DNA of 64,000 bases from Scyliorhinus canicula (Eukaryota). Made by a program: the position numbers and the translations under genes. Of the stretch, positions 1-25,289 are shown piece after piece. The first letter of the stretch is position 1; each line of letters opens with the position of its first letter. The notes below the pieces were generated by a model. That model saw nothing but the letters and a program-made list of their open reading frames with translations, did not search any database and was not told the DNA's origin. The stretch lies in NCBI RefSeq assembly GCF_902713615.1, contig NC_052158.1, positions 41,097,729 to 41,161,728 of the forward strand, written 5' to 3'.

Positions 1-1307
1 GAGGCACATGACCGACCTGAGCCAATGGGCAGCGACTGCTCTGCACCAATGGCAGATAGGTACCGTAAACCTCCTAGTCATACCACCACATTCACCCCTT
101 GTGGAGAAAGAAGCCGGGTGGGGGGCAGGAGTAAGAAGGGGGGGCTGTTGGACTGGTGGTATGACTAGAGAGAACGAGGTGTATCGAGGTAAATGGTGGC
201 TGCCCACTGGCTCGCGACGACTGTGCAGATACAATGGGCAGCAATGAACAGTACAGAAATAGAAAGACGAAGAAAAAAAAATGTGCAACTTGTACATTGG
301 AACTCTGAATGACACAAGGAGTCCGATAAAAGTCTTGTGGAACATCAGATCGGTGTGATCAGTCTGTCAGGTGCCCTCGATGTTCTGCTGGTCCGTCGCA
401 GTGGTGCAGGTGACGTCAGGCCGGTGGCCGTTCTTGACTCCGGGAGCGGTGGTCGTGATCCTGTGTCCGTACCCCTGGTCGGTGCTAGTGAAGCTCTGGC
501 CAGGGGAGGGGGTTCCTGTGCGCTGGGTTGCGGGGGCGCCGGGGAGGGGGGGGGTTGTGACTGGGAGAAGGGTGTTGATGTGGGGGGTTGAGGCCGCACG
601 CCGGCGGGTGCCGAGTCTCGAAGGGACCGTGTCCTGCCGACCGTCGGAATACTCCACATACGCGTACTGCGGGTTAGCGTGGAGTAACTGGACTCGTTCC
701 ACCAACGGGTCGGACTTGTTCACCCGCACGTGCTTCCGGAGCAAGATGGGTGTGGCCAGCCAAGTCGGGAGTGGGGATCTGGAGGACGGCTTCCTAGGGA
801 AAACAAGAAGATGTTCATGAGGCGTTTGGTTTGTGGCAGTGCAGAGGAGAGACCGAATTGAATGGAGGGCATCGGGGATGACCTCTTGCCAGTGGGAGAT
901 AGGGAGATCTTTGGACCATAGGGCCAGTAGGACGGTCTTCCAGACTGTGCCATTCTCCCGGTCGACCTGCCCGTCCTGACCTCCTAAATGGAGTAGGTCT
1001 TGATAAAAGTGATAGAAGCGGGCTACCCCCGGATGGCAGAGGTCCGCGTGGAGGGTGCGGAGGCAGTGAATCTGCGCGCTGGCGCAGGTACTGCGGGACA
1101 GGGCATCAGGAGGCTCGTTGAGCTTCCCAGGACGATACAAGATATCATAGTTGTACGTGGACAACTCGATCCGCCATCGCAAGATCTTGTCGTTCTTGAT
1201 CTTGCCCCTCTGTGCATTGTCAAACATGAAGGCCACTGACCGCTGGTCTGTGAGGAGGGTGAACCTCCTGCCGGCCAGATAGTGCCTCTAGTATCGCAAA
1301 GCTTCAA

Positions 1308-2708
1308 CTATGGCCTGTGCCTCCACTGAGAAATGGCGGAGTTCCGAAGCGTGGAGGGTCCGGGAGAAGAAGGCCACGGGTCTGCCCGCTTGGTTGAGGG
1401 TGGCCGCAGAGCTACATCCGACACGTCGCTCTCGACCTGAAATGGGAGGGACTCGTTGATAGCACGCATCGTGGCCTTTGCGATATCCTCTTTGATGCGG
1501 CTGAAGGCCTGGCGGGCTTCCATCGACAGTGGAAAAGTGTTGGATTGGATGAGGGGGCGGGCTTTGTCGGCGTAGTTCGGGACCCACTTGGCGTAATAAG
1601 AGAAGAAGCCCAGACAGCGTTTGAGGGAGTTGGGGAGATGGAGTTCCATCAGGGGGCGCATGCATTCGGGATCGGGGCCTATCACTCCGTTACGCACTAT
1701 GTAGCCGAGGATGGCTAGACGATTGGTGCGAAACACGCACTTATCCTTATTATATGTGAGGTTAAGGAGTTTTGCGGTACGGAGGAATTTTTGGAGGTTG
1801 ATGTCATGGTCCTGCTGGTCGTGGCCATAGATGGTGACGTTATCAAGATACGGGAAGGTCGCCCGTAAACCGTATTGGTTAACCATTCGGTCCATCTCCC
1901 GTTGGAAGACTGAGACCCCATTTGTGACACCGAATGGAACCCTTAGAAAGTGATAGAGGTGCCCACCTGCCTCGAACGCGATGTACTTGCGGTCACTCGC
2001 GCGGATGGGAAGCTGGTGATAGGCGGACTTAAGGTCCACAGTGGAGAAGACTTTGTACTTCGCGATCCTGTTAACCAGGTTGGAAATACGAGGGAGAGGG
2101 TACGCGTCCAGCTGCGTAAACCTGTTGATGGTCTGACTGTAGTCAATGACCATTCGGTTTTTCTCCCCAGTCCGAACTACCAGCACTTGGGCTCGCCAGG
2201 GACTGTTGCTGGCCTCGATGACTCCTTCCTTTAGTAGCCTCTGGACCTCGGACCTGATGAAGGTCCGGTCCTGGGCACTGCATCGTCTGCTCCTAATGGC
2301 GACGGGTTTGCAATCCGGGGTGAGGTTCGCAAACAAGGAAGGGGGGTCCACTTTCAGGGACGCGAGGCTGCAGACAGTAAGGGGGGGAATAGGGCCGCTG
2401 AGTTTAAAGGTCAAACTCTGCAGGTTGCACTGGAAATCCAGTCCTAAGAGTGCCAGTGCGCAGAGGCGGGGGAGGACGAGGAGTTTGTAATTTTTAAAAA
2501 CCCTCCCCTGGACCGTGATGTCCGCTACGCAGCATCCGGTGATGTGGACGGAGTGCGAACCTGAGGCTAGAGCTATCTTATGCTTGACCGGGTGAACGGG
2601 GAGCAAGCAGCGTCTTACCGTGTCGGGGTGGACAAAACTCTCTGTGCTCCCGGAGTCTAGTAGGCAGCTCGTTTCGTGTCCATTGAAAAGGATCTGTGTC
2701 GTCGCCAT
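1308..2708 (-). pseudogene. Gypsy pol fragment: aspartic protease, reverse transcriptase and start of RNase H
   Basis: 466-aa ORF with CLLDSGSTESF (protease), LDAYPLP, VDLKSAYHQ, PFGVTNG and FPYLDNV (RT); frameshifted in RNase H. Confidence 0.9.
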
Positions 2709-3122
2709 GGAGAGCGTGTGTGGTCATGACTGGTCGAGAGTCACTGCAGTGAGTCATGGCAGGAGGTCTGGGTCGTCTTCGCTTGCGGAGTAGTCGCTGG
2801 TGGGGTCTTCTGTGTTGGTCCAAAATGGCGGCGCCCGTCGGCCGCACGTGGGGTCGGGGCCCCAAGATGGCGGCGCCCGGGACCCACACGTGGCGTCTGG
2901 AACCCAAAATGGCGGCGCCCGTTGGTCACTCGAGGTGGCTAGAGGCAGGGGCAAAGAGGTCCGTGGGTCGCTCGTGGTGGCCGGGAGCGGGGGCAGAGAG
3001 GCCTGTGTGCCGCGTGGGGCCCTGGGGAAGCGCAGGGGGGCGATCTGCGGTCGCTGCGCGGAACAGCAGCGACCGACTTTGATTGGCAGGTCATTGAATA
3101 ATGACCTTTCTGACCGCAGCTC

Positions 3123-3836
3123 TTACATACTGCGGAGCGGGCCGGACAGCGCAGGCGGGGGTGCTTGGCCAGGCCACAGAAGTAACAGCGGGCCCCGTGA
3201 GCTTATCGGGGCCTCCCACAGCGCAGACCTGGGGGGGTCGGAGTCGGCGGGGGACAGGGGGGTTGCATGCCACGTTGCCCAAGTGGCTGCCGCGCGGCCG
3301 GGGGCATATGCACAGGCGTTTCGGTCAGCAACCTCCAGAGAGGATGCGAGGGTCCATGCCTCAGCGAGGCTTAAAGTGTCTTTTTCTAACAACCGCTGGC
3401 GTATTGAAGAAGGTTGCCTGCCTGCAACGAAGGCATCCCGGATTAATAGTTCCGTATGTTCTGCCGCAGTAGCTTGCGAGCAGGCGCAATTTCTCCCCAA
3501 GACAACGAGGGCCCGATAAAATTCATCAAGGGACTCACCGGGGAACTGTTGCCTTGTAGCCAGGAGATGCCGTGCGTAGACTAGGTGAACAGGCCTGAGA
3601 AAATGTCCTTTCAGAAGATCCATGGCCGCGTCATAGTCTTGTTCATCCTTAATCATCGAGTAGATGGCGGTGCCCACGCACGAGTGGAGGATGTGGAGTT
3701 TCTGCTCCTTGGTGGGTTGGCTGCCTGTGGTGGAGAGGTAGCTGTTGAAGCACGCCAGCCAATGTTTAAAAGTTGCTGACGCGTTTGTAGCTTGCGGGCT
3801 GATGCGGAGGCAGTCTGGTTTGATCCGAAGCTCCAT
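3123..3836 (-). pseudogene. Gypsy gag (frameshifted at its 3' end)
   Basis: 237-aa ORF directly downstream of the 5' LTR. It is homologous to the gag ORFs at about 41100-41800 and 43150-44170 (IRQRLLE and LAxSLEVA motifs). Confidence 0.85.
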
Positions 3837-4154
3837 TTCAAAATTCTAGCTGATTAAATTGATGTACCATCAATTGGACTCGAGTCGTGAAGAAGTTCCA
3901 AATATCAGGCTTTAATCAACTAGTTGTGTGCCCGGCAGTCGACTTACAGAGAAAGGCCGACTGCCGGGTCCTATGGGTTCTTATACCCCGCCTCGTAGGC
4001 GGGACTACTTGCCTCTCGGCCAGTGGGTGAGCAGTCACATGACTAGCCTCAGCCAATCAGCAGAGAGGCACATGACCAACCTGAGCCAATGGGCAGCGAG
4101 TGCTCTGCACCAATGGCAGATAGGTACCGTAAACCTCCTAGTCATACCACCACA

Positions 4155-6939
4155 ATGATTTTATTGGTATTACTGAGACTTGGTTGAGGGAAGGGCAAGA
4201 TTGGCAACTAAATATCCCAGGGTATAGATGCTTCTGGAGGGATAGAGAGAGAGGTAAAAGGGGTAGAGGAGTTGCATTACTGGTCAGAGATGATATCACA
4301 GCTGTGATTAAGGAGGGCACTATGGAGGATTCGAGCACTGAGGCAGTATGGGTAGAGTTAAGAAATAGGATGGGTGCAGTAACATTGTTGGGACTTTACT
4401 ACAGGATTCCCAAAAGCGAGCGTGAAGTAGAGGTACAAATATGTAGACAGATTATAGAAAAATGTAGGAGCAATAGGGTGGTCGTGATGGGAGATTTTAA
4501 CTTCCCCAACATTGAATGGGACTCATGTAGTGTTGGAGGCGTAGATGGAGCAGAATTTGAAAGGAGCATCCAGGAGAGTTTTTTAGAGCAATATGTAAAT
4601 AGTCCAACTCGGGAACGGGCCATACAGGACCTGGTATTGGGGAATGATCCCGTCCAGGTGGTTGAAGTTTCAGTCGGTGATTACTTTGGGAATAGCAATC
4701 ACAATTCCTTAAGTTTTAGAATACTCATGGACAAAGACGAGAGTGGTTCGAAAGGAAGAGTGCTAAATTGGGAAAGGCCAAGTATAACAAAATTCGGCAG
4801 GAGCTAGGGAATGTGGATTGGGAGCAGGTGTTTAAGGGTAAATCCACATTTGAAATGTGGGAGTCTTTTAAGGAAAGGTTGATTAGAGTGCAGGACAGAC
4901 ATGTCCCTGTGAAAATGAGGGATAGAAATGGCAAGATTAGGAAACCATGGATGACGGGTGGAATCGTGAGACGAGCTGAGTTGAAAAAGGAAGCATACAT
5001 AAGATCTAGGCGACTTAAAACTGAAGAAGCTTTGGAGGAATATCAGGAAAGTAGGACAAATCTCAAACGTGCAATAAAGAGGGCCAACAGAGGTCATGAA
5101 ATATCTTTGGCTAACAGGGTTATGGAAAATCTCAAAGCCTTTTATACGTATATAAGGAGCAAGAGGGTAACTAGAGAAAGGATTGGCCCACTCAAAGACA
5201 AAAGAGGGAATTTGTGCGTGGAGTCAGAGGAAATGGATGAGATTCTTAATGAGTACTTTGCATCGGTATTCACCAAGGAGAGGGACATGACGGATGTTGA
5301 GGTTAGGGATGGATGTTTAAATACTCCAGGTCAAGTCGGCATAAGGAAGGGGGAAGTTTTGGGTATTCTAAAAGGCATTAAGGTGGACAAGTCCCCAGGT
5401 CCAGATGGGATCTATCCCAGGTTACTGAGGGAAGCGAGGGACAAAATAGCTGGGGCCTTAACAGATATCTTTGCAGCATCCTTGAGCACGGGTGAGGTCC
5501 CGGAGACTGGAGAATTGCTAATGTTGTTCCTTTGTTTAAGAAGGGTAGCAGGGATAATCCAGGGAATTATAGACCTGTGAGCTTGATGTCAGTGGTAGGC
5601 AAACTGTTGGAGAAGATACTGAGGGATAGGATCTATTCACATTTGGAAGAAAATAGACATCAGTGATAGACAGCAGGTTGTGCAGGGAAGGTCATGTCTT
5701 ACAAACCTAATAGAATTCTTTGAGGAAGTGACAAAGTTAATTGATATGGAGAGGGCTGTAGATGTCATATGCATGGATTTCAGTAAGGCGTTTGATAAAG
5801 TTTCCCATGGCAGGTTGATGGAAAAAGTGAAGTCGCATGGGTTCAGGGTGTACGAGCTAGATGGATAAAGAACTGGCTGGGCAACAGGAGACAGAGAGTA
5901 GTGGTGGAAGGGAGTGTCTCAAAATGGAGAGGGGTGACTAGTGGTGTTCCACAGGGATCCGTGCTCGGACCACTGTTGTTTGTGATATACATAAATGATC
6001 TGGAGGAAGGTATAGGTGGTCTGATTAGCAAGTTTGCAGATGATACTAAGATTGGTGGAGTTGCAGATAGCGAGGAGGACTGTCAGAGAATACAGCAAAA
6101 TATAGATAGATTGGAGAGTTGGGCAGAGAAATGGCAGATGGAGTTCAATCCAGGCAAATGCGAGGTGATGCATTTTGGAAGATCCAATTCAAGAGCGGAC
6201 TATATGGTCAATGAAAGAGTCCTGGGTAAAATTGATGCACAGAGAGATCTGGATCTGGGAATTCAGGTCCATTGTACCCTGAAGGTGGCAACGCAGGTTG
6301 ATAGAGTGGTCAAGAAGGCATACAGCATGCTTGCCTTCATCAGACGGGGTATTGAGTACAAGAGTCGGCAGGTCATGTTACAGCTGTATAGGACTTTGGT
6401 TAGACCACGTTTAGAATACTGCATGCAGTTCTGGTTGACACATTACCAGAAGGATGTGGATGCTTTAGAGAGAGTGCAGAGGAGGTTCACCAGGATGTTG
6501 CCTGGTATGGAGGGTGCTAGCTATGAAGAAAGGTTGAGTAGATTAGGATTGTTTTCGTTGTAAAGACGGAGATTGAGGGGGGACCTGATTGAGGTCTACA
6601 AAATTCTGAGAGGTATGGACAGGATGGACAGAGTCGGGGTGTCAATTACAAGCGGTCACGATTTCAAGGTGAGAGGGGGAAAGTTTAAGGGAGATGTGCA
6701 TGGAAAGTTTTTTACGCAGAGGGTGGTGGGTACCTGGAACGCTTTACCAGTGGAGGTGGTAGAGGCGGGCACGATAGCATCATTTAAGATGCATCTAGAC
6801 AGATCCGGGAAACAGAGGGAAGTAGATCCTTGGAAAATAGGCGACAGGTTTAGATAAAGGATCTGGATCGGTGCAGGCTGGGAGGGCCGAAGGTCCTGTT
6901 CCTGTGCTGTAATTTTCTTTGTTCTTATTTTCTTTGTTC
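4155..6939 (+). mobile_element. CR1 LINE ORF2 (endonuclease and RT) with 3' tail; its 5' part is displaced by Gypsy element 1
   Basis: ORF fragments with TETW, MGDFNFP, KSPGPDG, DFSKAFD, GVPQGSVLGP and KFADD motifs. Ends in a TTTTCTTTGTTC repeat tail. Several frameshifts. Confidence 0.93.
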
Positions 6940-6960
6940 AGCCCCGACTGGTTTGAAAAA

Positions 6961-7205
6961 TCTATTACTGTAATACTGAGCCCATGGAGAGATATATTAC
7001 TGAAATACTGAATCCATGGAGAGTTATATTACTGTAATGCTGAACCCATAGTGAGATCTACTACTGTAATACTGAACCTGCAGAGATATATTACTGTAAT
7101 ACTGACCCACAGTGAAATATATTACTCTAATACTGCATCCACACAGAGATATATTATCCTAACACTGAGCCCACACAGAGAGATCTATTGTAATCCTGAG
7201 CCCAG
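6961..7205 (+). repeat. AT-rich minisatellite, unit about 32 bp (GAGATATATTACTGTAATACTGAGCCCA...), about 7-8 degenerate copies
   Basis: Directly visible tandem units ending about 80 bp upstream of the alpha2 acceptor. Confidence 0.8.
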
Positions 7206-7286
7206 AAAGCAATCCAGCAATATAAAAATAGGCTTTTCTTAAACAATTGACCTTTGATTCTCTGATTCTCTGTTGATCATTGACAG

Positions 7287-7562
7287 GAATTCATATTTTC
7301 CAATGGATAAGGACTGTCGAGGTCACTGAAAACGGCTCCATTAAGAGGTCGATGCGGTTTGGATTTGATGGAAAGGATTATATTAGTTTAGAGCCAGACA
7401 GGATGAAATGGATTGCAACCGATGATGTTGCAGTGAAGACCATGGAGAAATGGAATTCGGATGAATCCTGGAACAAGTATTGGAAATGGCAGTTGGAAGT
7501 AGAATTGGTTGAACGTTTAAAACTACGTTTACACTTTGGAAAGGAATATCTTAAAAGGAAAG
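7287..7562 (+). CDS. MHC class I-like heavy chain, alpha2 domain exon (nonclassical; no Cys101 or Cys164)
   Basis: Pyrimidine tract plus ACAG acceptor (7283-7286) and GT donor (7563). 276 bp, phase 1-1, the canonical alpha2 exon size. Translation GIHIFQW...FGFDGKDYISL...W...KTMEKW...LE...L...GKEYLKRK aligns with the class I alpha2 pattern. Confidence 0.93.
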
Positions 7563-7587
7563 GTATTTTTTTTCTATATATAACTTC

Positions 7588-9192
7588 TGTTACAACACCC
7601 TTGTCTAGTGCATGGCCGATTCCAGTTCCACAGACGCCGGAGTCCCAACACAAGTGAATTAACCAATAATTCGTATAACATTGCAGAATCTTTGGCCCAT
7701 GACTACCTGATAAGTGATAGCTACCAGGTTTATAAGTTGAACACAATAACTGTTTATCTATAACCGAAACAAAGATAAAATGCAGTAATTGTAATGGAAT
7801 AAAGACAAGCTAACCTACTACCCCTCTTTTACCGTCCCACATTCTACCCAACACTCACAAGACAAACAAACACAGGGGGGGAGGTGTGAAATAATAAGGA
7901 TTAAGGCAAATAAAATAAAGATGAGAGTATTTGCTTCAGTTGCAAATTTCTTTAGTGCACCCATTTCCTGATATGAGTGAGGTTTAAGCCTCTAATGTTG
8001 CAGCCCACTGACTTTCCTGTATTTTAAAAAAACTCAACACACATCTTTCCTGGAGCGTCAGAGGCTTTGTTCCTTCTACTTTGTTCTCAGCCCGTTGGGT
8101 CTCTCCCAGGCCCTGTTTTCAGGAATAAAACATTCACAAGCTTATTAGAACATACAACATAGAACGATACAGCGCAGTACAGGCCCTTCGGCCCTCGATG
8201 TTGCACCGACATGGAAAAAAACTAAAGGCCATCTAACCTACACTATGCCCTTATCATCCATATGCTTATCCAATAAACTTTTAAATGCCCTCAATGTTGG
8301 CGAGTTCACTACTGTTGCAGGTAGGGCATTCCACGGCCTCACCACTCTTTGCGTAAAAAACCCACCTCTGACCTCTGTCCTATATCTATTACCCCTCAAT
8401 TTAAGGCTATGTCCCCTCGTGCTAGCCACCTCCATCTGCGGGAGAAGGCTCTCGTTGTCCACCCTATCTAACCCTCTGATCATTTTGTATGCCTCTATTA
8501 AGTCACCTCTTAACCTTCTTCTCTCTAACGAAAACAACCTCAAGTCCATCAGCCTTTCCTCATAAGATTTTCCCTCCATACCAGGCAACATCCTGGTAAA
8601 TCTCCTCTGCACCCGTTCCAAAGCTTCCACGTCCTTCCTATAATGAGGCAACCAGAACTGTACGCAATACTCCAAATGCGGCTGTACTAGAGTTTTGTAC
8701 AACTGCAACATGACCTCATGGCTCCGGAACTCAATCCCTCTACCAGTAAAGGCCAACACACCATAGGCCTTCTTCACAACCCTATCAACCTGGGTCTTAT
8801 TGGAGAGAAAGAGTTGGCTGGATCGTTTCATGCAGAGAGAGTTTCCGGAGAAACTTCAGTTGGGGTCCTTCCCCTCCACTGCCAGAATTCAAACTGAAAG
8901 TCAAAAATGGAACCTAGTCTCACTGAGGAACATTCCAGAGGCAGCAGAGCTAATCAAAGCCTTTCCCCGAACAGGACAGCTTCTGAGGTCAGTTCATTGG
9001 CCACCAGCCAAGCGAATGAGTCCAGTTCACCACTGATGTCAGACTAAAACAGCACAACCTGCTGGAGGTTCCTGTTTTAAATTAAAGGTAACTCGCTTGG
9101 CCTTGAGGACAAAATTTGTAATAGCCAAAAGAATATGGAATTTAAAAGGTGAAACAAGAAACAAACCAGGGTTAAACAGAAGGATCCTTACA
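7588..9192. mobile_element. Probable solo LTR in the alpha2-alpha3 intron, interrupted by a CR1 3' fragment
   Basis: TGTTACA...CCTTACA termini; near-TSD CTTC/TTTC. Confidence 0.55.
8147..8795 (-). mobile_element. 5'-truncated CR1 LINE (3' end of ORF2 and tail)
   Basis: ORF 8238-8831 (VQFWLPHY, LERVQRRFTRMLPG); (TTCTATG)n-type tail; TSD CTTATT at 8141-8146 and 8796-8801. Confidence 0.92.
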
Positions 9193-9272
9193 TTTCACTG
9201 ATCTATCAAACCGTTCTCCCATTCCATTCAGTGTCTGTCTATTGTTTGTGTTTTCACCCTTTCCCATTACAG

Positions 9273-9551
9273 ATCAGCCTGAAGTCTTCATCTCTAAAAG
9301 CGAGCCCAATAGTCAGTACAAGCCGCTCACTCTCTCCTGCCTGGTTACTGGGTTTTATCCTGTAGACATCGAGGTGACCTGGCTAAGGAATGGAACAGTA
9401 ATGTCGGAGATACAATCCTCGGGGGTTCGACCGAACCACGATGGAACCCATCAGATACTGAAAGAGATTGAAATAAATGCTGGGGATGAGGATCAATACT
9501 CCTGTCAAATTGAACACAGCAGCCTGGCAGAGCCCAAGCTCCATCAGTGGG
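9273..9551 (+). CDS. MHC class I-like heavy chain, alpha3 (Ig C1) exon
   Basis: TTTCCCATTACAG acceptor and GTAAGG donor at 9552. 279 bp, phase 1-1. LSCLVTGFYPVDIEVTWL...RPNHDGTHQ...YSCQIEHSSL is a class I C1 domain with both Cys and the Trp. Confidence 0.95.
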
Positions 9552-10955
9552 GTAAGGAACTGTACTAGATGTGTGTGTACTCCGTGTGTGTGAAAAAGAT
9601 CAAAAGCAAGTGAAAGGGAGCCTATCTGACTACTCAGAGGGGTGAATGAATGGAACATACATGGTGACAGGCAAGAGAAACTGAGACTGTGCTATGGAGC
9701 AGCCAGGGTGCCCTCCCACGGAATTGGGGCGGTGCCTAGGCATCAACCGCCGTCTTGCTGAACACCCACCAAACAGTACCCTTGGCAGCAGGAATGTGCG
9801 CCAGGACCAGAAACACCAACGGGGTCGGATACAGACGGGCCAGGGGTGCGGGTGTTGACGGGGGGGGGCAATGCGTGGGCGGGGCCAGCAGTGCCAACCA
9901 GGGTCACCATGTAGCCCATGGTACCTGGACGGACACAGGAGTATGCGCCATGCTAACATGGTGGCCTTTCACCTCTTGCAGACAATGGCATTCGGGCATC
10001 AACCCTTGATGCTGGCTGCTTTGGTGATGGTCGCAGCCCTGCGAGATACCCTGCGCCGCATGAGTGGGGGTCGGTCAGAGAGGAGGGGGAAGCTGCAGGA
10101 TAGAACCGGGCTGCAGAGGAACGGGCTGCAGAAGGGTAGGTGACGACCGCGTGTACCAGCACCACATGTCATTCGACGACCTGTTGGACTGGGTGTGCAG
10201 ACGAGACTGTGGATAACAGAGGGACTGTGTGACACATCTGCCAGATCTCCTGCCTGGTTACTGGGTTTTATCGCAGGAGTATAGGGGAGGACAACCACTC
10301 CCAGTGATTGTTAAGGTGATGATCGCCCTGAACATTTATCAACGGGGTTCTTCCAGGCTCTGAGTGGGGACCTGTCTGGGACCTCGCAGGCCTCGGCGCC
10401 ATCACAGATCCCCTATATGCACAGTCGGACCAGTATATCCAGTTCCATATGGCCAGTGTCCACCAGGATGCCTGCAGGGTTCGCTGCCATCGCCAGGCAC
10501 AGGCAGATAACAGGCCACTGTACACCAACCAAATGGGTTTCACGCCATGAACATTCAGTTGGTCTGCGATCAACAGATGCACATCATGCACGTCTGTGCC
10601 CAATACCCAGGCAGTGTGCACGACTCCTTCATCTTGGCACAATCGGCGATCCCCGGCATGTTTGAGAAGAACCCCACCCCTGCGGGGTTGGCTGCTGGGC
10701 GACAGGAGTTTATCCGCTGTGGTCATGGCAGATGATACCTATCCGGAGACCACAACGTGGAGATCCGATAGAATGAAACCCTTACAGCGACCAGGGGTGT
10801 GGTCGAGGAGTGCTTAGGCATCCTCAAGATGCGCTTCAGGTGCCTTGGTCATTTTGGAATGACCCTCCAGTACGAGGCTGAGAGTGTCACCCTCATCGTG
10901 GTGGCCTGCTGCATCCTCCACAATATAGCACAGCAGAGGGGCGATGTGCTGGATA

Positions 10956-20458: not shown

Positions 20459-20578
20459 AAATCCCGGGAAACAGATCGGGACAATTGCATACTGGACTTA
20501 TAACAGGATTAATGCTCAATGCACTTGCTGTTATATTTGGGATAATCGGAATAATCATCTGGAAAAAACAACGGAGAG
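20459..20578 (+). CDS. MHC class I-like connecting peptide and transmembrane exon
   Basis: TGTTTCAG acceptor and GTAAG donor at 20579. 120 bp, phase 1-1. In frame with alpha3 it reads EIPGNRSGQLHTGLITGLMLNALAVIFGIIGIIIWKKQRR, a hydrophobic span plus basic stop-transfer. The sequence is non-repetitive. Confidence 0.87.
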
Positions 20579-24734: not shown

Positions 24735-24960
24735 GTAACATGTAGTTAAAAAATGTTTGCAGTTAAAACGTTTTACTCTTGTCCATAGTAACAGATGAAA
24801 CAGGAAACCGACAGCAACCATTCCATAGGAATTTTGGTAAAGAACATCAAATCGGTGAGAATCCAAGTTTTATAAAATCCTGTTTAAATTATTAGCCTAT
24901 TAATGTCCACATTTAGACTTTTCCCAAATATCGTAAAGTTGACTTTAATATTTTCATTAG

Positions 24961-25289
24961 ATTTAGCACAACCATTTCTGAAGGCCGGCCTCCCTCGCCA
25001 TCACCCGGAAACCAGGAATGATAATGTGGAACAGGAGCTGAGTGACTTCTATCCTCAGCTCAAACCGGGGTCTTTTCAGACAGGGTCACAACCCGGAGCA
25101 CATTACCCAGTGGAAGGTAGCAAAACCAGAGCTGAACAGGACAAGAGTTCAGTCCAAACAGACACTTCAAATCCTGCAAACAATGTTTCTGATGTAAATA
25201 CAGTAAAATGTGATGTGGATAACGACACAGCAGAACGCTTAATTAACTGTGAGGAAGGGGAGACAACACAGAGTTTGCTGAGACACTGA
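24961..25289 (+). CDS. Probable terminal cytoplasmic exon of the class I-like gene (109 aa and stop)
   Basis: TTTTCATTAG acceptor in phase 1 exactly in frame with ORF 24903-25289 (DLAQPF...QSLLRH*). Unique, non-TE sequence. Confidence 0.7.

What the first reader, a model, noticed from the sequence alone, without database searches (positions are those of the whole stretch)
7287..7562. MHC class I-like alpha2 domain that has lost both disulfide cysteines and the N-terminal peptide anchors but kept the C-terminal ones
Seen, by manual alignment to the class I pattern (HLA numbering): QxMYGCEL reads QWIRTVEV (C101V, codon GTC) and YLExxCxEWLxxYL reads QLEVELVERLKLRL (Y159Q, C164L codon TTG, W167R, Y171R). 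Y123, T143, K146, W147 and the beta2m-contact residues Q96, D119, G120 and D122 are intact. The exon has no stops, intact splice sites and the canonical 276 bp. Established: C101-C164 is nearly invariant in class I, and Y159/Y171 bind the peptide N-terminus. Inference: paired, multi-nucleotide replacement by hydrophobic residues suggests an old functional nonclassical lineage rather than decay. The A-pocket end of the groove is remodelled and cationic (R167, R171) and may bind a non-peptide or N-terminally extended, acidic ligand. Cartilaginous fish have several described nonclassical lineages (UBA, UCA, UDA, UEA); I cannot tell from here whether this gene belongs to one or is new.
Basis: partly seen in the sequence, partly recalled or inferred. 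Interest (0 to 1): 0.8.

Follow-up and report, generated by a model that had tools for sequence, protein, structure and literature searches.

The report
Catshark nonclassical MHC-I alpha2 exon
This is a real, expressed exon of a small-spotted catshark nonclassical MHC class I gene, and its missing disulfide cysteines are an old trait shared by a whole shark-only gene family that is already annotated and mapped, so it is interesting biology but not a new discovery.

Summary
Window 7287-7562 (+) is a 276-bp, phase-1, AG/GT-bounded exon that matches Pfam MHC_I (E 7.8e-14). It has V (GTC) at position 101 and L (TTG) at 164. Y159, W167 and Y171 are replaced; Y123, T143, K146, W147, Q96, D119, G120 and D122 are kept.

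It is exon 3 of an annotated Scyliorhinus canicula gene (RefSeq XP_038671460-64). By position this is most likely LOC119975713 on chromosome 13, which Verissimo et al. 2023 flag as 'MHC-Ib', the last such gene before B2M and BRD2. Assembled run contigs splice this exon to the alpha3 exon and to about 261 upstream letters, the size of an alpha1 exon.

The missing cysteines are not special to this gene. In 72 family members from 13 shark species that cover the position, none has C101 and five keep C164. All 16 other cartilaginous-fish and lungfish class I sequences compared keep both.

The gene belongs to a conserved one-per-species orthogroup (alpha1 90%, alpha2 86% identical between catshark and horn shark). 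A confident AlphaFold model shows the normal class I fold.

Shark-only distribution, many copies and map position fit the published UEA lineage. I could not read the UEA paper or obtain a named UEA sequence. The scan had already noted another Cys-less alpha2 exon 622 kb upstream.

Verdict: real and functional, but already known.

The parts
7287..7562 (+). alpha2 exon (exon 3) of the MHC-Ib heavy-chain gene; 276 bp, phase 1; no cysteine
   Evidence: AG/GT borders and open frame. Pfam MHC_I E 7.8e-14. Identical to the alpha2 stretch (from residue 106) of RefSeq protein P0156. Run contigs start or end exactly at 7286/7562.
9273..9551 (+). alpha3 exon (immunoglobulin C1-set domain), 279 bp, both cysteines present
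   Evidence: Pfam C1-set E 8.4e-19. 100% identical to P0156 residues 197-289. A GT..AG joint from 7562 to 9273 is seen in contigs of runs X2 and X15.
20459..20578 (+). connecting-peptide and transmembrane exon, 120 bp
   Evidence: 100% identical to P0156 residues 290-329. Splice borders read from the sequence.
24789..24854 (+). small cytoplasmic exon, 66 bp; an alternative acceptor 6 nt downstream gives isoform X2
   Evidence: Motif search and sequence reading. The isoforms P0156 and P0270 differ by the two residues VT.
24961..25289 (+). last coding exon (long cytoplasmic tail) including the TGA stop at 25287-25289
   Evidence: The tblastn match is 99% identical to P0156 residues 351-460 and starts just upstream of the splice acceptor; the exon borders are read from the sequence.

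Best explanation
The exon encodes the alpha2 half of the ligand-binding platform of a functional, membrane-anchored nonclassical MHC class I (MHC-Ib) heavy chain of the small-spotted catshark. The gene is a conserved, one-per-species member of a large shark-only class I family in the MHC-Ib cluster beside B2M and BRD2; this family is almost certainly the published UEA lineage.

Shown here:
- The gene is intact, annotated and spliced.
- The whole family lacks C101, and nearly all of it lacks C164.
- The fold is predicted to be a normal class I fold.
- The groove domains are as conserved between species as the Ig-like alpha3 domain.

Inferred:
- The heavy chain pairs with beta2-microglobulin, because Q96, D119, G120 and D122 are invariant or nearly so in the family.
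- The lost disulfide, which normally ties the alpha2 helix to the sheet floor, is replaced by hydrophobic packing of V101 against L164.
- The F-pocket end (Y123, T143, K146, W147) still holds a carboxylate-bearing end of a ligand.
- The A-pocket end is rebuilt (V7, L63, R66, R99, Q159, R167, R171) and no longer holds a free peptide N-terminus.
- The molecule therefore displays one conserved, non-polymorphic ligand, or acts as a receptor ligand itself, in the manner of monomorphic class Ib molecules.
For: - Identity with RefSeq: the window's alpha2, alpha3, TM and tail exons match S. canicula XP_038671462 (P0156) essentially perfectly.
- Map position: the coding span of 105,936 bp, with a 338-aa single-exon gene 439 bp upstream, fits LOC119975713. 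That locus is at 41,016,461-41,124,046 on NC_052158.1 and is flagged 'MHC-Ib' in the published catshark map. B2M lies at 41.36 Mb and BRD2 at 41.46 Mb.
- Expression and splicing: a GT..AG joint from 7562 to 9273 appears in two runs. Contigs in four runs begin at 7286 and carry 94-335 further upstream letters that do not lie on the window; in two of these runs the upstream part is 260-261 letters, the expected size of an alpha1 exon. The window's alpha2 allele is found without any difference in contigs of two runs (X2, X15) from different studies, and a third run (X1) has a contig over the exon and 112 bases of intron with a single difference, in the intron at 7574.
- Family-wide cysteine loss: C101 is present in 0 of 72 family members and C164 in 5 of 72. 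All 16 comparison sequences (classical shark UAA, other shark Ib genes, chimaera, lungfish) keep both cysteines.
- Phylogeny: the family is one clade with 100% support. This gene lies in a starred 10-row orthogroup with short branches.
- Conservation: catshark versus horn shark identity is 90% in alpha1, 86% in alpha2 and 86% in alpha3.
- Structure: the AlphaFold2 model has mean pLDDT 92.2, with 95-96 in the blocks that hold V101 and L164. Its best structural matches are chicken, duck and shark class I, at TM 0.86-0.92.
- Literature: UEA is the multicopy Ib lineage in the cluster bounded by B2M and BRD2. UBA and UEA are the two expanded shark Ib families.
Against: - No sequence named UEA could be obtained, and the paper that defines UEA is not held. 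The lineage name therefore rests on distribution, copy number and map position.
- No orthologue DNA could be fetched, so no dN/dS was computed.
- The only nucleotide comparison with a sister species is too small to tell anything. Its alpha2 contig shows 6 differences: the five listed are 3 non-synonymous and 2 synonymous, and the sixth was inferred from the S. torazame protein to be non-synonymous.
- The runs are only guessed to be RNA.
- Beta2-microglobulin pairing, the V101-L164 contact and the ligand are all inferred; none was tested.
- The leader and alpha1 exons lie outside the window. I know them only from the RefSeq model and from the size of the spliced contigs.
Confidence: 0.85

Rival explanations
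1. The family is a class I lineage distinct from every described shark lineage (UAA to UGA), so the Cys-less alpha2 marks an undescribed lineage.
For: I could not place any sequence named UEA in my tree, and no hit carried a lineage name. The abstract of the UEA paper, as I remember it, says the nine anchor residues are not conserved; yet T143, K146 and W147 are well conserved here.
Against: The family has dozens of genes in every shark genome examined, and 16 loci are flagged MHC-Ib in the catshark cluster between SLC39A7 and B2M. The authors who mapped that cluster say it holds single-copy UDA plus multicopy UEA. A family this large and this obvious could hardly have been missed by them. The only other expanded family, UBA, lies in a different cluster beside C4.
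Confidence: 0.07
2. The gene is an expressed but decaying class I relic. Under this reading, loss of the disulfide and of the N-terminal anchors reflects relaxed constraint.
For: Four of the nine anchors and both cysteines are gone. The introns are full of transposable elements and the gene spans about 106 kb. The catshark versus sister-species comparison of alpha2, counted as 4 non-synonymous to 2 synonymous (one of the six inferred), cannot exclude neutrality.
Against: Open reading frames are intact in at least 9 species across the orders Carcharhiniformes, Lamniformes, Orectolobiformes and Heterodontiformes, with a close relative in Hexanchiformes. Groove domains are 86-90% identical between catshark and horn shark, and the alpha1 helix is almost unchanged. 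Branches in the tree are short. Splicing is correct. The fold is predicted with confidence.
Confidence: 0.03
3. The gene is functional but presents nothing: the groove is filled or closed, and the molecule acts only as a ligand or receptor, as MIC, HFE or FcRn do.
For: Bulky residues line the floor at the positions equivalent to 95, 97, 99, 114 and 116 (F, W, R, M, F; my own mapping). The long conserved cytoplasmic tail suggests a trafficking or signalling role.
Against: The carboxylate-binding set T143, K146 and W147 is conserved in 54, 65 and 73 of 73 family members. That is hard to explain without a bound ligand. The model's nearest neighbours are open-groove class I molecules.
Confidence: 0.2

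Closest known systems
Shark UEA nonclassical class I lineage (Almeida et al. 2021, J Immunol 207:824; mapped by Verissimo et al. 2023, PMC10751288)
   Same: Both are found only in sharks (13 species here, including Heptranchias and Pristiophorus). Both are large multigene families and both are MHC-linked, in the Ib cluster bounded by B2M and BRD2. Both have several peptide-terminus anchors replaced, mostly by hydrophobic residues.
   Different: Nothing I tested differs. Still open: no named reference sequence was compared, and I could not check whether the paper states the loss of the alpha2 cysteines. This particular gene is unusual within the family: it is one copy per species, highly conserved, carries R167 and R171, has a free Cys in the alpha1 helix, and has a tail of about 130 residues.
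Classical shark class I, UAA (Triakis scyllium; solved structure 6lup)
   Same: The exon plan, the domain order, the N86 glycosylation site, the beta2-microglobulin contact residues and the alpha3 disulfide are the same. The predicted fold matches at TM 0.86 to 6lup.
   Different: Overall identity is 33-35%. UAA keeps C101-C164 and eight of the nine anchors (position 123 is S); this gene keeps five anchors and neither cysteine. The two form separate clades with 100% support.
Monomorphic ligand-presenting class Ib molecules such as MR1 and CD1, and the shark CD1-like UFA and UGA
   Same: Strong cross-species conservation of the groove domains, a single copy per species and no differences seen in the window allele across runs all resemble MR1-type molecules. 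MR1 is also the top sequence match in the PDB, at 186 bits.
   Different: MR1 and CD1 keep the alpha2 disulfide (from my own knowledge). No orthology is implied. UFA and UGA are described as separate single-copy genes in the same cluster, and this gene nests inside the multicopy family instead.
Teleost nonclassical class I lineages (S and P; Grimholt et al. 2015, PMC4364491)
   Same: These are also nonclassical class I genes with altered anchors and odd extra cysteines in alpha1.
   Different: The S and P lineages are reported to keep the alpha2 cysteine pair, which that paper describes as 'conserved in most MHC molecules'. Loss across a whole family, as seen here, is therefore unusual among class I molecules.

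Membership tests
MHC class I heavy chain | The alpha2 domain matches the MHC_I profile | tested here: met
   PF00129 at E 7.8e-14, profile positions 93-179 of 179
MHC class I heavy chain | A membrane-proximal C1-set Ig domain with its disulfide, followed by a TM exon | tested here: met
   PF07654 at E 8.4e-19; TM exon at 20459-20578
MHC class I heavy chain | The C101-C164 disulfide in alpha2 (nearly invariant, not strictly defining) | tested here: not met
   V101 and L164; C101 is absent from all 72 family members that cover the position
MHC class I heavy chain | The class I fold (alpha1/alpha2 platform on an Ig domain) | tested here: met
   AlphaFold2 pLDDT 92.2; TM 0.9 to chicken BF2 and 0.86 to shark 6lup
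MHC class I heavy chain | Association with beta2-microglobulin | not testable with these tools
   The contact residues Q96, D119, G120 and D122 are conserved.
Classical class I (UAA) | The nine conserved residues that hold the peptide termini | tested here: not met
   V7, N84, Q159 and R171 replace four of them; Y59, Y123, T143, K146 and W147 are kept
Classical class I (UAA) | Clusters with UAA in a tree | tested here: not met
   Separate clades, each with 100% support
UEA lineage | Present in sharks only, not in rays or chimaeras | tested here: met
   All hits above 50% identity are sharks; the nearest chimaera hit is 30% identical and keeps both cysteines. Among the best 150 of 1.84 billion representative proteins, only shark proteins lack both cysteines.
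UEA lineage | A large multigene family | tested here: met
   More than 100 clusters at 90% identity across 13 species, and at least 8 protein clusters in S. canicula on one chromosome
UEA lineage | Lies in the MHC-Ib cluster bounded by B2M/BRD2 and HSD17B8/RXRB | tested here: met
   Matched by position to LOC119975713, the last MHC-Ib locus before B2M. The match rests on gene span and neighbouring gene, not on coordinates given for the window.
UEA lineage | Groups with reference sequences named UEA | not testable with these tools
   No named UEA sequence was returned by any search, and the defining paper is not held

The most novel reading that the evidence does not exclude
Within the UEA family, this one-per-species orthogroup may be a distinct, undescribed functional unit. 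Its marks are the basic residues R167 and R171, fixed across the orthogroup, with R99 and R66 in nearly all members, at the A-pocket end; the retained carboxylate-binding F pocket; a free cysteine in the alpha1 helix; a long conserved tail; and isoforms without the TM exon. On this reading it would be a shark counterpart of MR1-type monomorphic presenters, holding a small anionic or N-terminally modified ligand on a platform that works without the alpha2 disulfide.
Probability: 0.12. Interest if true: 0.6.

Novelty: already known. Interest (0 to 1): 0.25.

Why it matters
A whole class I family that has worked for hundreds of millions of years without the alpha2 disulfide shows that this bond is not essential to the class I platform. 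The bond is kept in nearly every other class I and class I-like molecule. The conserved orthogroup would be a good candidate for the first ligand and structure study of the shark UEA family, whose function is unknown. As a discovery it adds little: the gene is annotated, mapped and part of a described lineage.

Tried and rejected
- Search for alpha1 in the window. I looked in 1-7286 by ORF listing, motif scan and tblastn. It is not there; that stretch holds an LTR retroelement and a LINE. The leader and alpha1 lie upstream of the window.
- Orthologue DNA for dN/dS. I tried to fetch the catshark gene and its orthologues: the first look-up (P0156) found no gene on record and the other six (S. 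canicula, Mustelus, Carcharodon, Heterodontus, Chiloscyllium, S. torazame) returned gene ranges but no DNA. No dN/dS was computed.
- The papers defining the shark Ib lineages. Neither Almeida 2020 nor Almeida 2021 could be opened by PMC id, DOI or PubMed id. Further text searches found no accessible statement on UEA cysteines.
- Beta2-microglobulin complex prediction.
- Groove geometry. Pocket volume and the V101-L164 distance could not be measured, because model coordinates are not exposed to scripts (one search shows that /data holds only FASTA files).
- Pseudogene reading. Considered and rejected; see the rival explanations.

Full report
**The observation.** Window 7287-7562 on the + strand is bounded by an AG acceptor (7285-7286) and a GT donor (7563-7564) and is 276 bp long. 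Read in phase 1, from 7289, it gives 91 codons with no stop. This translation matches the second half of the Pfam MHC_I profile (positions 93-179 of 179) at E 7.8e-14. The residue aligned to C101 is V (codon GTC) and the one aligned to C164 is L (TTG). Y159, W167 and Y171 are Q, R and R. Q96, D119, G120, D122, Y123, T143, K146 and W147 are kept.

**The gene.**
- An alpha3 exon follows at 9273-9551 (C1-set, E 8.4e-19).
- A connecting-peptide/TM exon lies at 20459-20578.
- A 66-bp cytoplasmic exon lies at 24789-24854, and the last coding exon at 24961-25289.
- The leader and alpha1 (P0156 residues 1-104) are not in the window. The 7.3 kb upstream of the exon holds retroelement ORFs.
- The annotated coding range is 105,936 bp, with a 338-aa single-exon gene 439 bp upstream.
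- This fits LOC119975713 on chromosome 13 (NC_052158.1, 41,016,461-41,124,046). Verissimo et al. 2023 flag that locus 'MHC-Ib'. It is the last such locus before B2M (41.36 Mb), BRD2 (41.46 Mb) and the class II genes (42.0 Mb).

**Expression.** I laid the contigs of four public runs on 6900-9800.
- Two runs (X2, X15) carry a contig that joins 7562 to 9273 across a GT..AG intron.
- Four runs carry contigs that begin exactly at 7286 and continue upstream for 94 to 335 letters that do not lie on the window.
- In two of these runs the upstream part is 260-261 letters, which equals the 87 codons of alpha1 in P0156.
- The window's alpha2 allele appears without any difference in contigs of two runs (X2, X15) from different studies; a third run (X1) has one difference, in the intron at 7574.
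- A second, roughly 85-90% identical spliced contig shows that paralogues are expressed as well.
- The runs are only guessed to be RNA, but spliced joints are hard to explain otherwise.

**The family.**
- An exhaustive profile-free search with the exon against 1.84 billion representative proteins gave 352 hits.
- The only hits that lack both cysteines are shark proteins.
- A search with the closest full-length relative (horn shark, P0001) returned more than 100 clusters at 50-91% identity. All were from sharks: Scyliorhinus, Mustelus, Carcharodon, Cetorhinus, Chiloscyllium, Hemiscyllium, Stegostoma, Rhincodon, Heterodontus, Heptranchias and Pristiophorus. Identity then dropped to 30-39% for other cartilaginous-fish class I.
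- In an alignment of 73 family members and 16 outgroups, C101 is present in none of the 72 members that cover the position (V 68, I 2, A 1, L 1). C164 is present in 5; the rest have L 26, F 19, Y 7, S 6, G 4, D 2, and W, H and T once each.
- Every outgroup keeps both cysteines.
- The disulfide loss is therefore a shared, ancestral trait of the family. The simplest history is that C101 was lost once and position 164 then became free to vary.
- W147, Q96, G120, D122 and N86 are invariant wherever the position is covered. D119 is present in 71 members, K146 in 65 and T143 in 54 of 73.

**Position in the family.**
- A maximum-likelihood tree (85 rows, 276 columns, quick search) gives the family 100% support as one clade on a long branch.
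- This gene falls in a starred group of ten: two Scyliorhinus species, two Mustelus genes, Carcharodon, Cetorhinus, Chiloscyllium, Stegostoma and Heterodontus. The end branches for this gene and its nearest orthologues are 0.025-0.09.
- That group sits inside a starred 17-row clade that also holds Heptranchias genes.
- Catshark versus horn shark identity is 90% in alpha1, 86% in alpha2 and 86% in alpha3, and the alpha1 helix is almost unchanged across five genera.
- Groove domains that are at least as conserved as the Ig domain point to a non-polymorphic class Ib molecule with a fixed partner or ligand, not to a decaying gene.

**Structure.**
- AlphaFold2, run on the 88-row alignment, gives mean pLDDT 92.2 and pTM 0.81.
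- The strand that holds V101 and the helix that holds L164 lie in blocks with pLDDT 95-96.
- Foldseek places the model with chicken, duck and shark classical class I (TM 0.86-0.92), and also with chicken YF1*7.1 and MR1.
- No solved structure matched the query closely by sequence; the best match scored 186 bits.

**Which lineage.**
- Accessible literature names two expanded shark Ib families, UBA and UEA, plus the single-copy genes UDA, UFA and UGA.
- It places UDA and multicopy UEA in the cluster bounded by B2M/BRD2 on one side and HSD17B8/RXRB/SLC39A7/COL11A2 on the other. It places UBA in a separate cluster beside C4.
- In the catshark map, 16 loci flagged MHC-Ib lie between SLC39A7 and B2M, and three more lie near C4.
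- A shark-only, multicopy family in the first cluster fits UEA and nothing else described.
- I could not open the paper that defines UEA, and no search returned a sequence named UEA. The lineage name is therefore an inference, which I put at about 0.9.
- From memory of that paper's abstract, UEA is shark-restricted, very large, MHC-linked and has lost conserved anchors in favour of hydrophobic residues. This agrees with what I found.
- I cannot say whether the paper states the loss of the cysteines, but any alignment figure would show it.

**How it most likely works.** All of the following is inferred.
- The heavy chain pairs with beta2-microglobulin and reaches the membrane through its TM segment. 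RefSeq isoforms of the orthologues that skip the TM exon suggest there may also be a soluble form.
- V101 and L164 pack against each other where the disulfide used to be.
- Y123, T143, K146 and W147 keep an F pocket able to hold a terminal carboxylate.
- At the other end, V7, L63, R66, R99, Q159, R167 and R171 replace the tyrosine cluster that binds a free amino terminus, leaving a more basic pocket. These residues are my own mapping onto HLA numbering.
- The ligand is unknown.

**What could not be done.** No orthologue DNA could be retrieved, so there is no dN/dS. The one sister-species comparison shows 6 differences in alpha2, counted as 4 non-synonymous and 2 synonymous (one inferred), and has no statistical power. 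There was no beta2-microglobulin sequence for a complex test, and no model coordinates for pocket geometry.

**Verdict.** The reading as an old, functional nonclassical gene is supported. The suggestion that it might be a new lineage is not. The feature is a family trait of an annotated, mapped and described shark lineage. The scan had already noted a second Cys-less alpha2 exon 622 kb upstream (s1-249372), and what is probably this gene's own alpha1 region 16-32 kb upstream of the window (s1-270776).

Noticed in passing
window 10245-10271: This stretch matches the alpha3 exon (9332-9358) at 26 of 27 bases and translates as ISCLVTGFY. It lies inside transposon-like sequence in the alpha3-TM intron.
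   Followed up: partly
orthologue proteins P0157 (S. torazame) and P0001 (Heterodontus): These RefSeq isoforms join alpha3 directly to the cytoplasmic exons and skip the TM exon. That would give a soluble form of the molecule in two genera.
   Followed up: no
P0267 (isoform X1 of this gene), upstream of the window: Isoform X1 uses a far-upstream alternative first exon whose product does not look like a signal peptide. This explains the gene span of about 106 kb. Isoform X3 (P0156) has a normal leader.
   Followed up: no
P0156 residue 86 (alpha1 helix, equivalent to HLA position 71), outside the window: An unpaired cysteine is conserved in most of the orthogroup (Scyliorhinus, Mustelus P0158, Carcharodon, Chiloscyllium, Stegostoma, Heterodontus) and in Heptranchias, but is present in only 10 of 73 family members. 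There is no partner cysteine in alpha1 or alpha2.
   Followed up: partly
window 8160-8840 (- strand): A LINE fragment in the alpha2-alpha3 intron is extremely abundant in the run contigs, with summed depth up to about 3e5. This swamps any depth signal from the gene itself.
   Followed up: no
window 24961-25289: The cytoplasmic tail carries YPQL (a YxxPhi-type motif) in Scyliorhinus, but this is not kept in Mustelus or Heterodontus. The C-terminal ETTQSLLRH is conserved between catshark and horn shark.
   Followed up: partly
window 1-6857: An LTR retroelement on the - strand (protease, RT and integrase ORFs, with LTR-like repeats near 8-247 and 3928-4158) and a LINE with an RT ORF on the + strand (4184-6857) fill the intron upstream of the alpha2 exon.
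   Followed up: no
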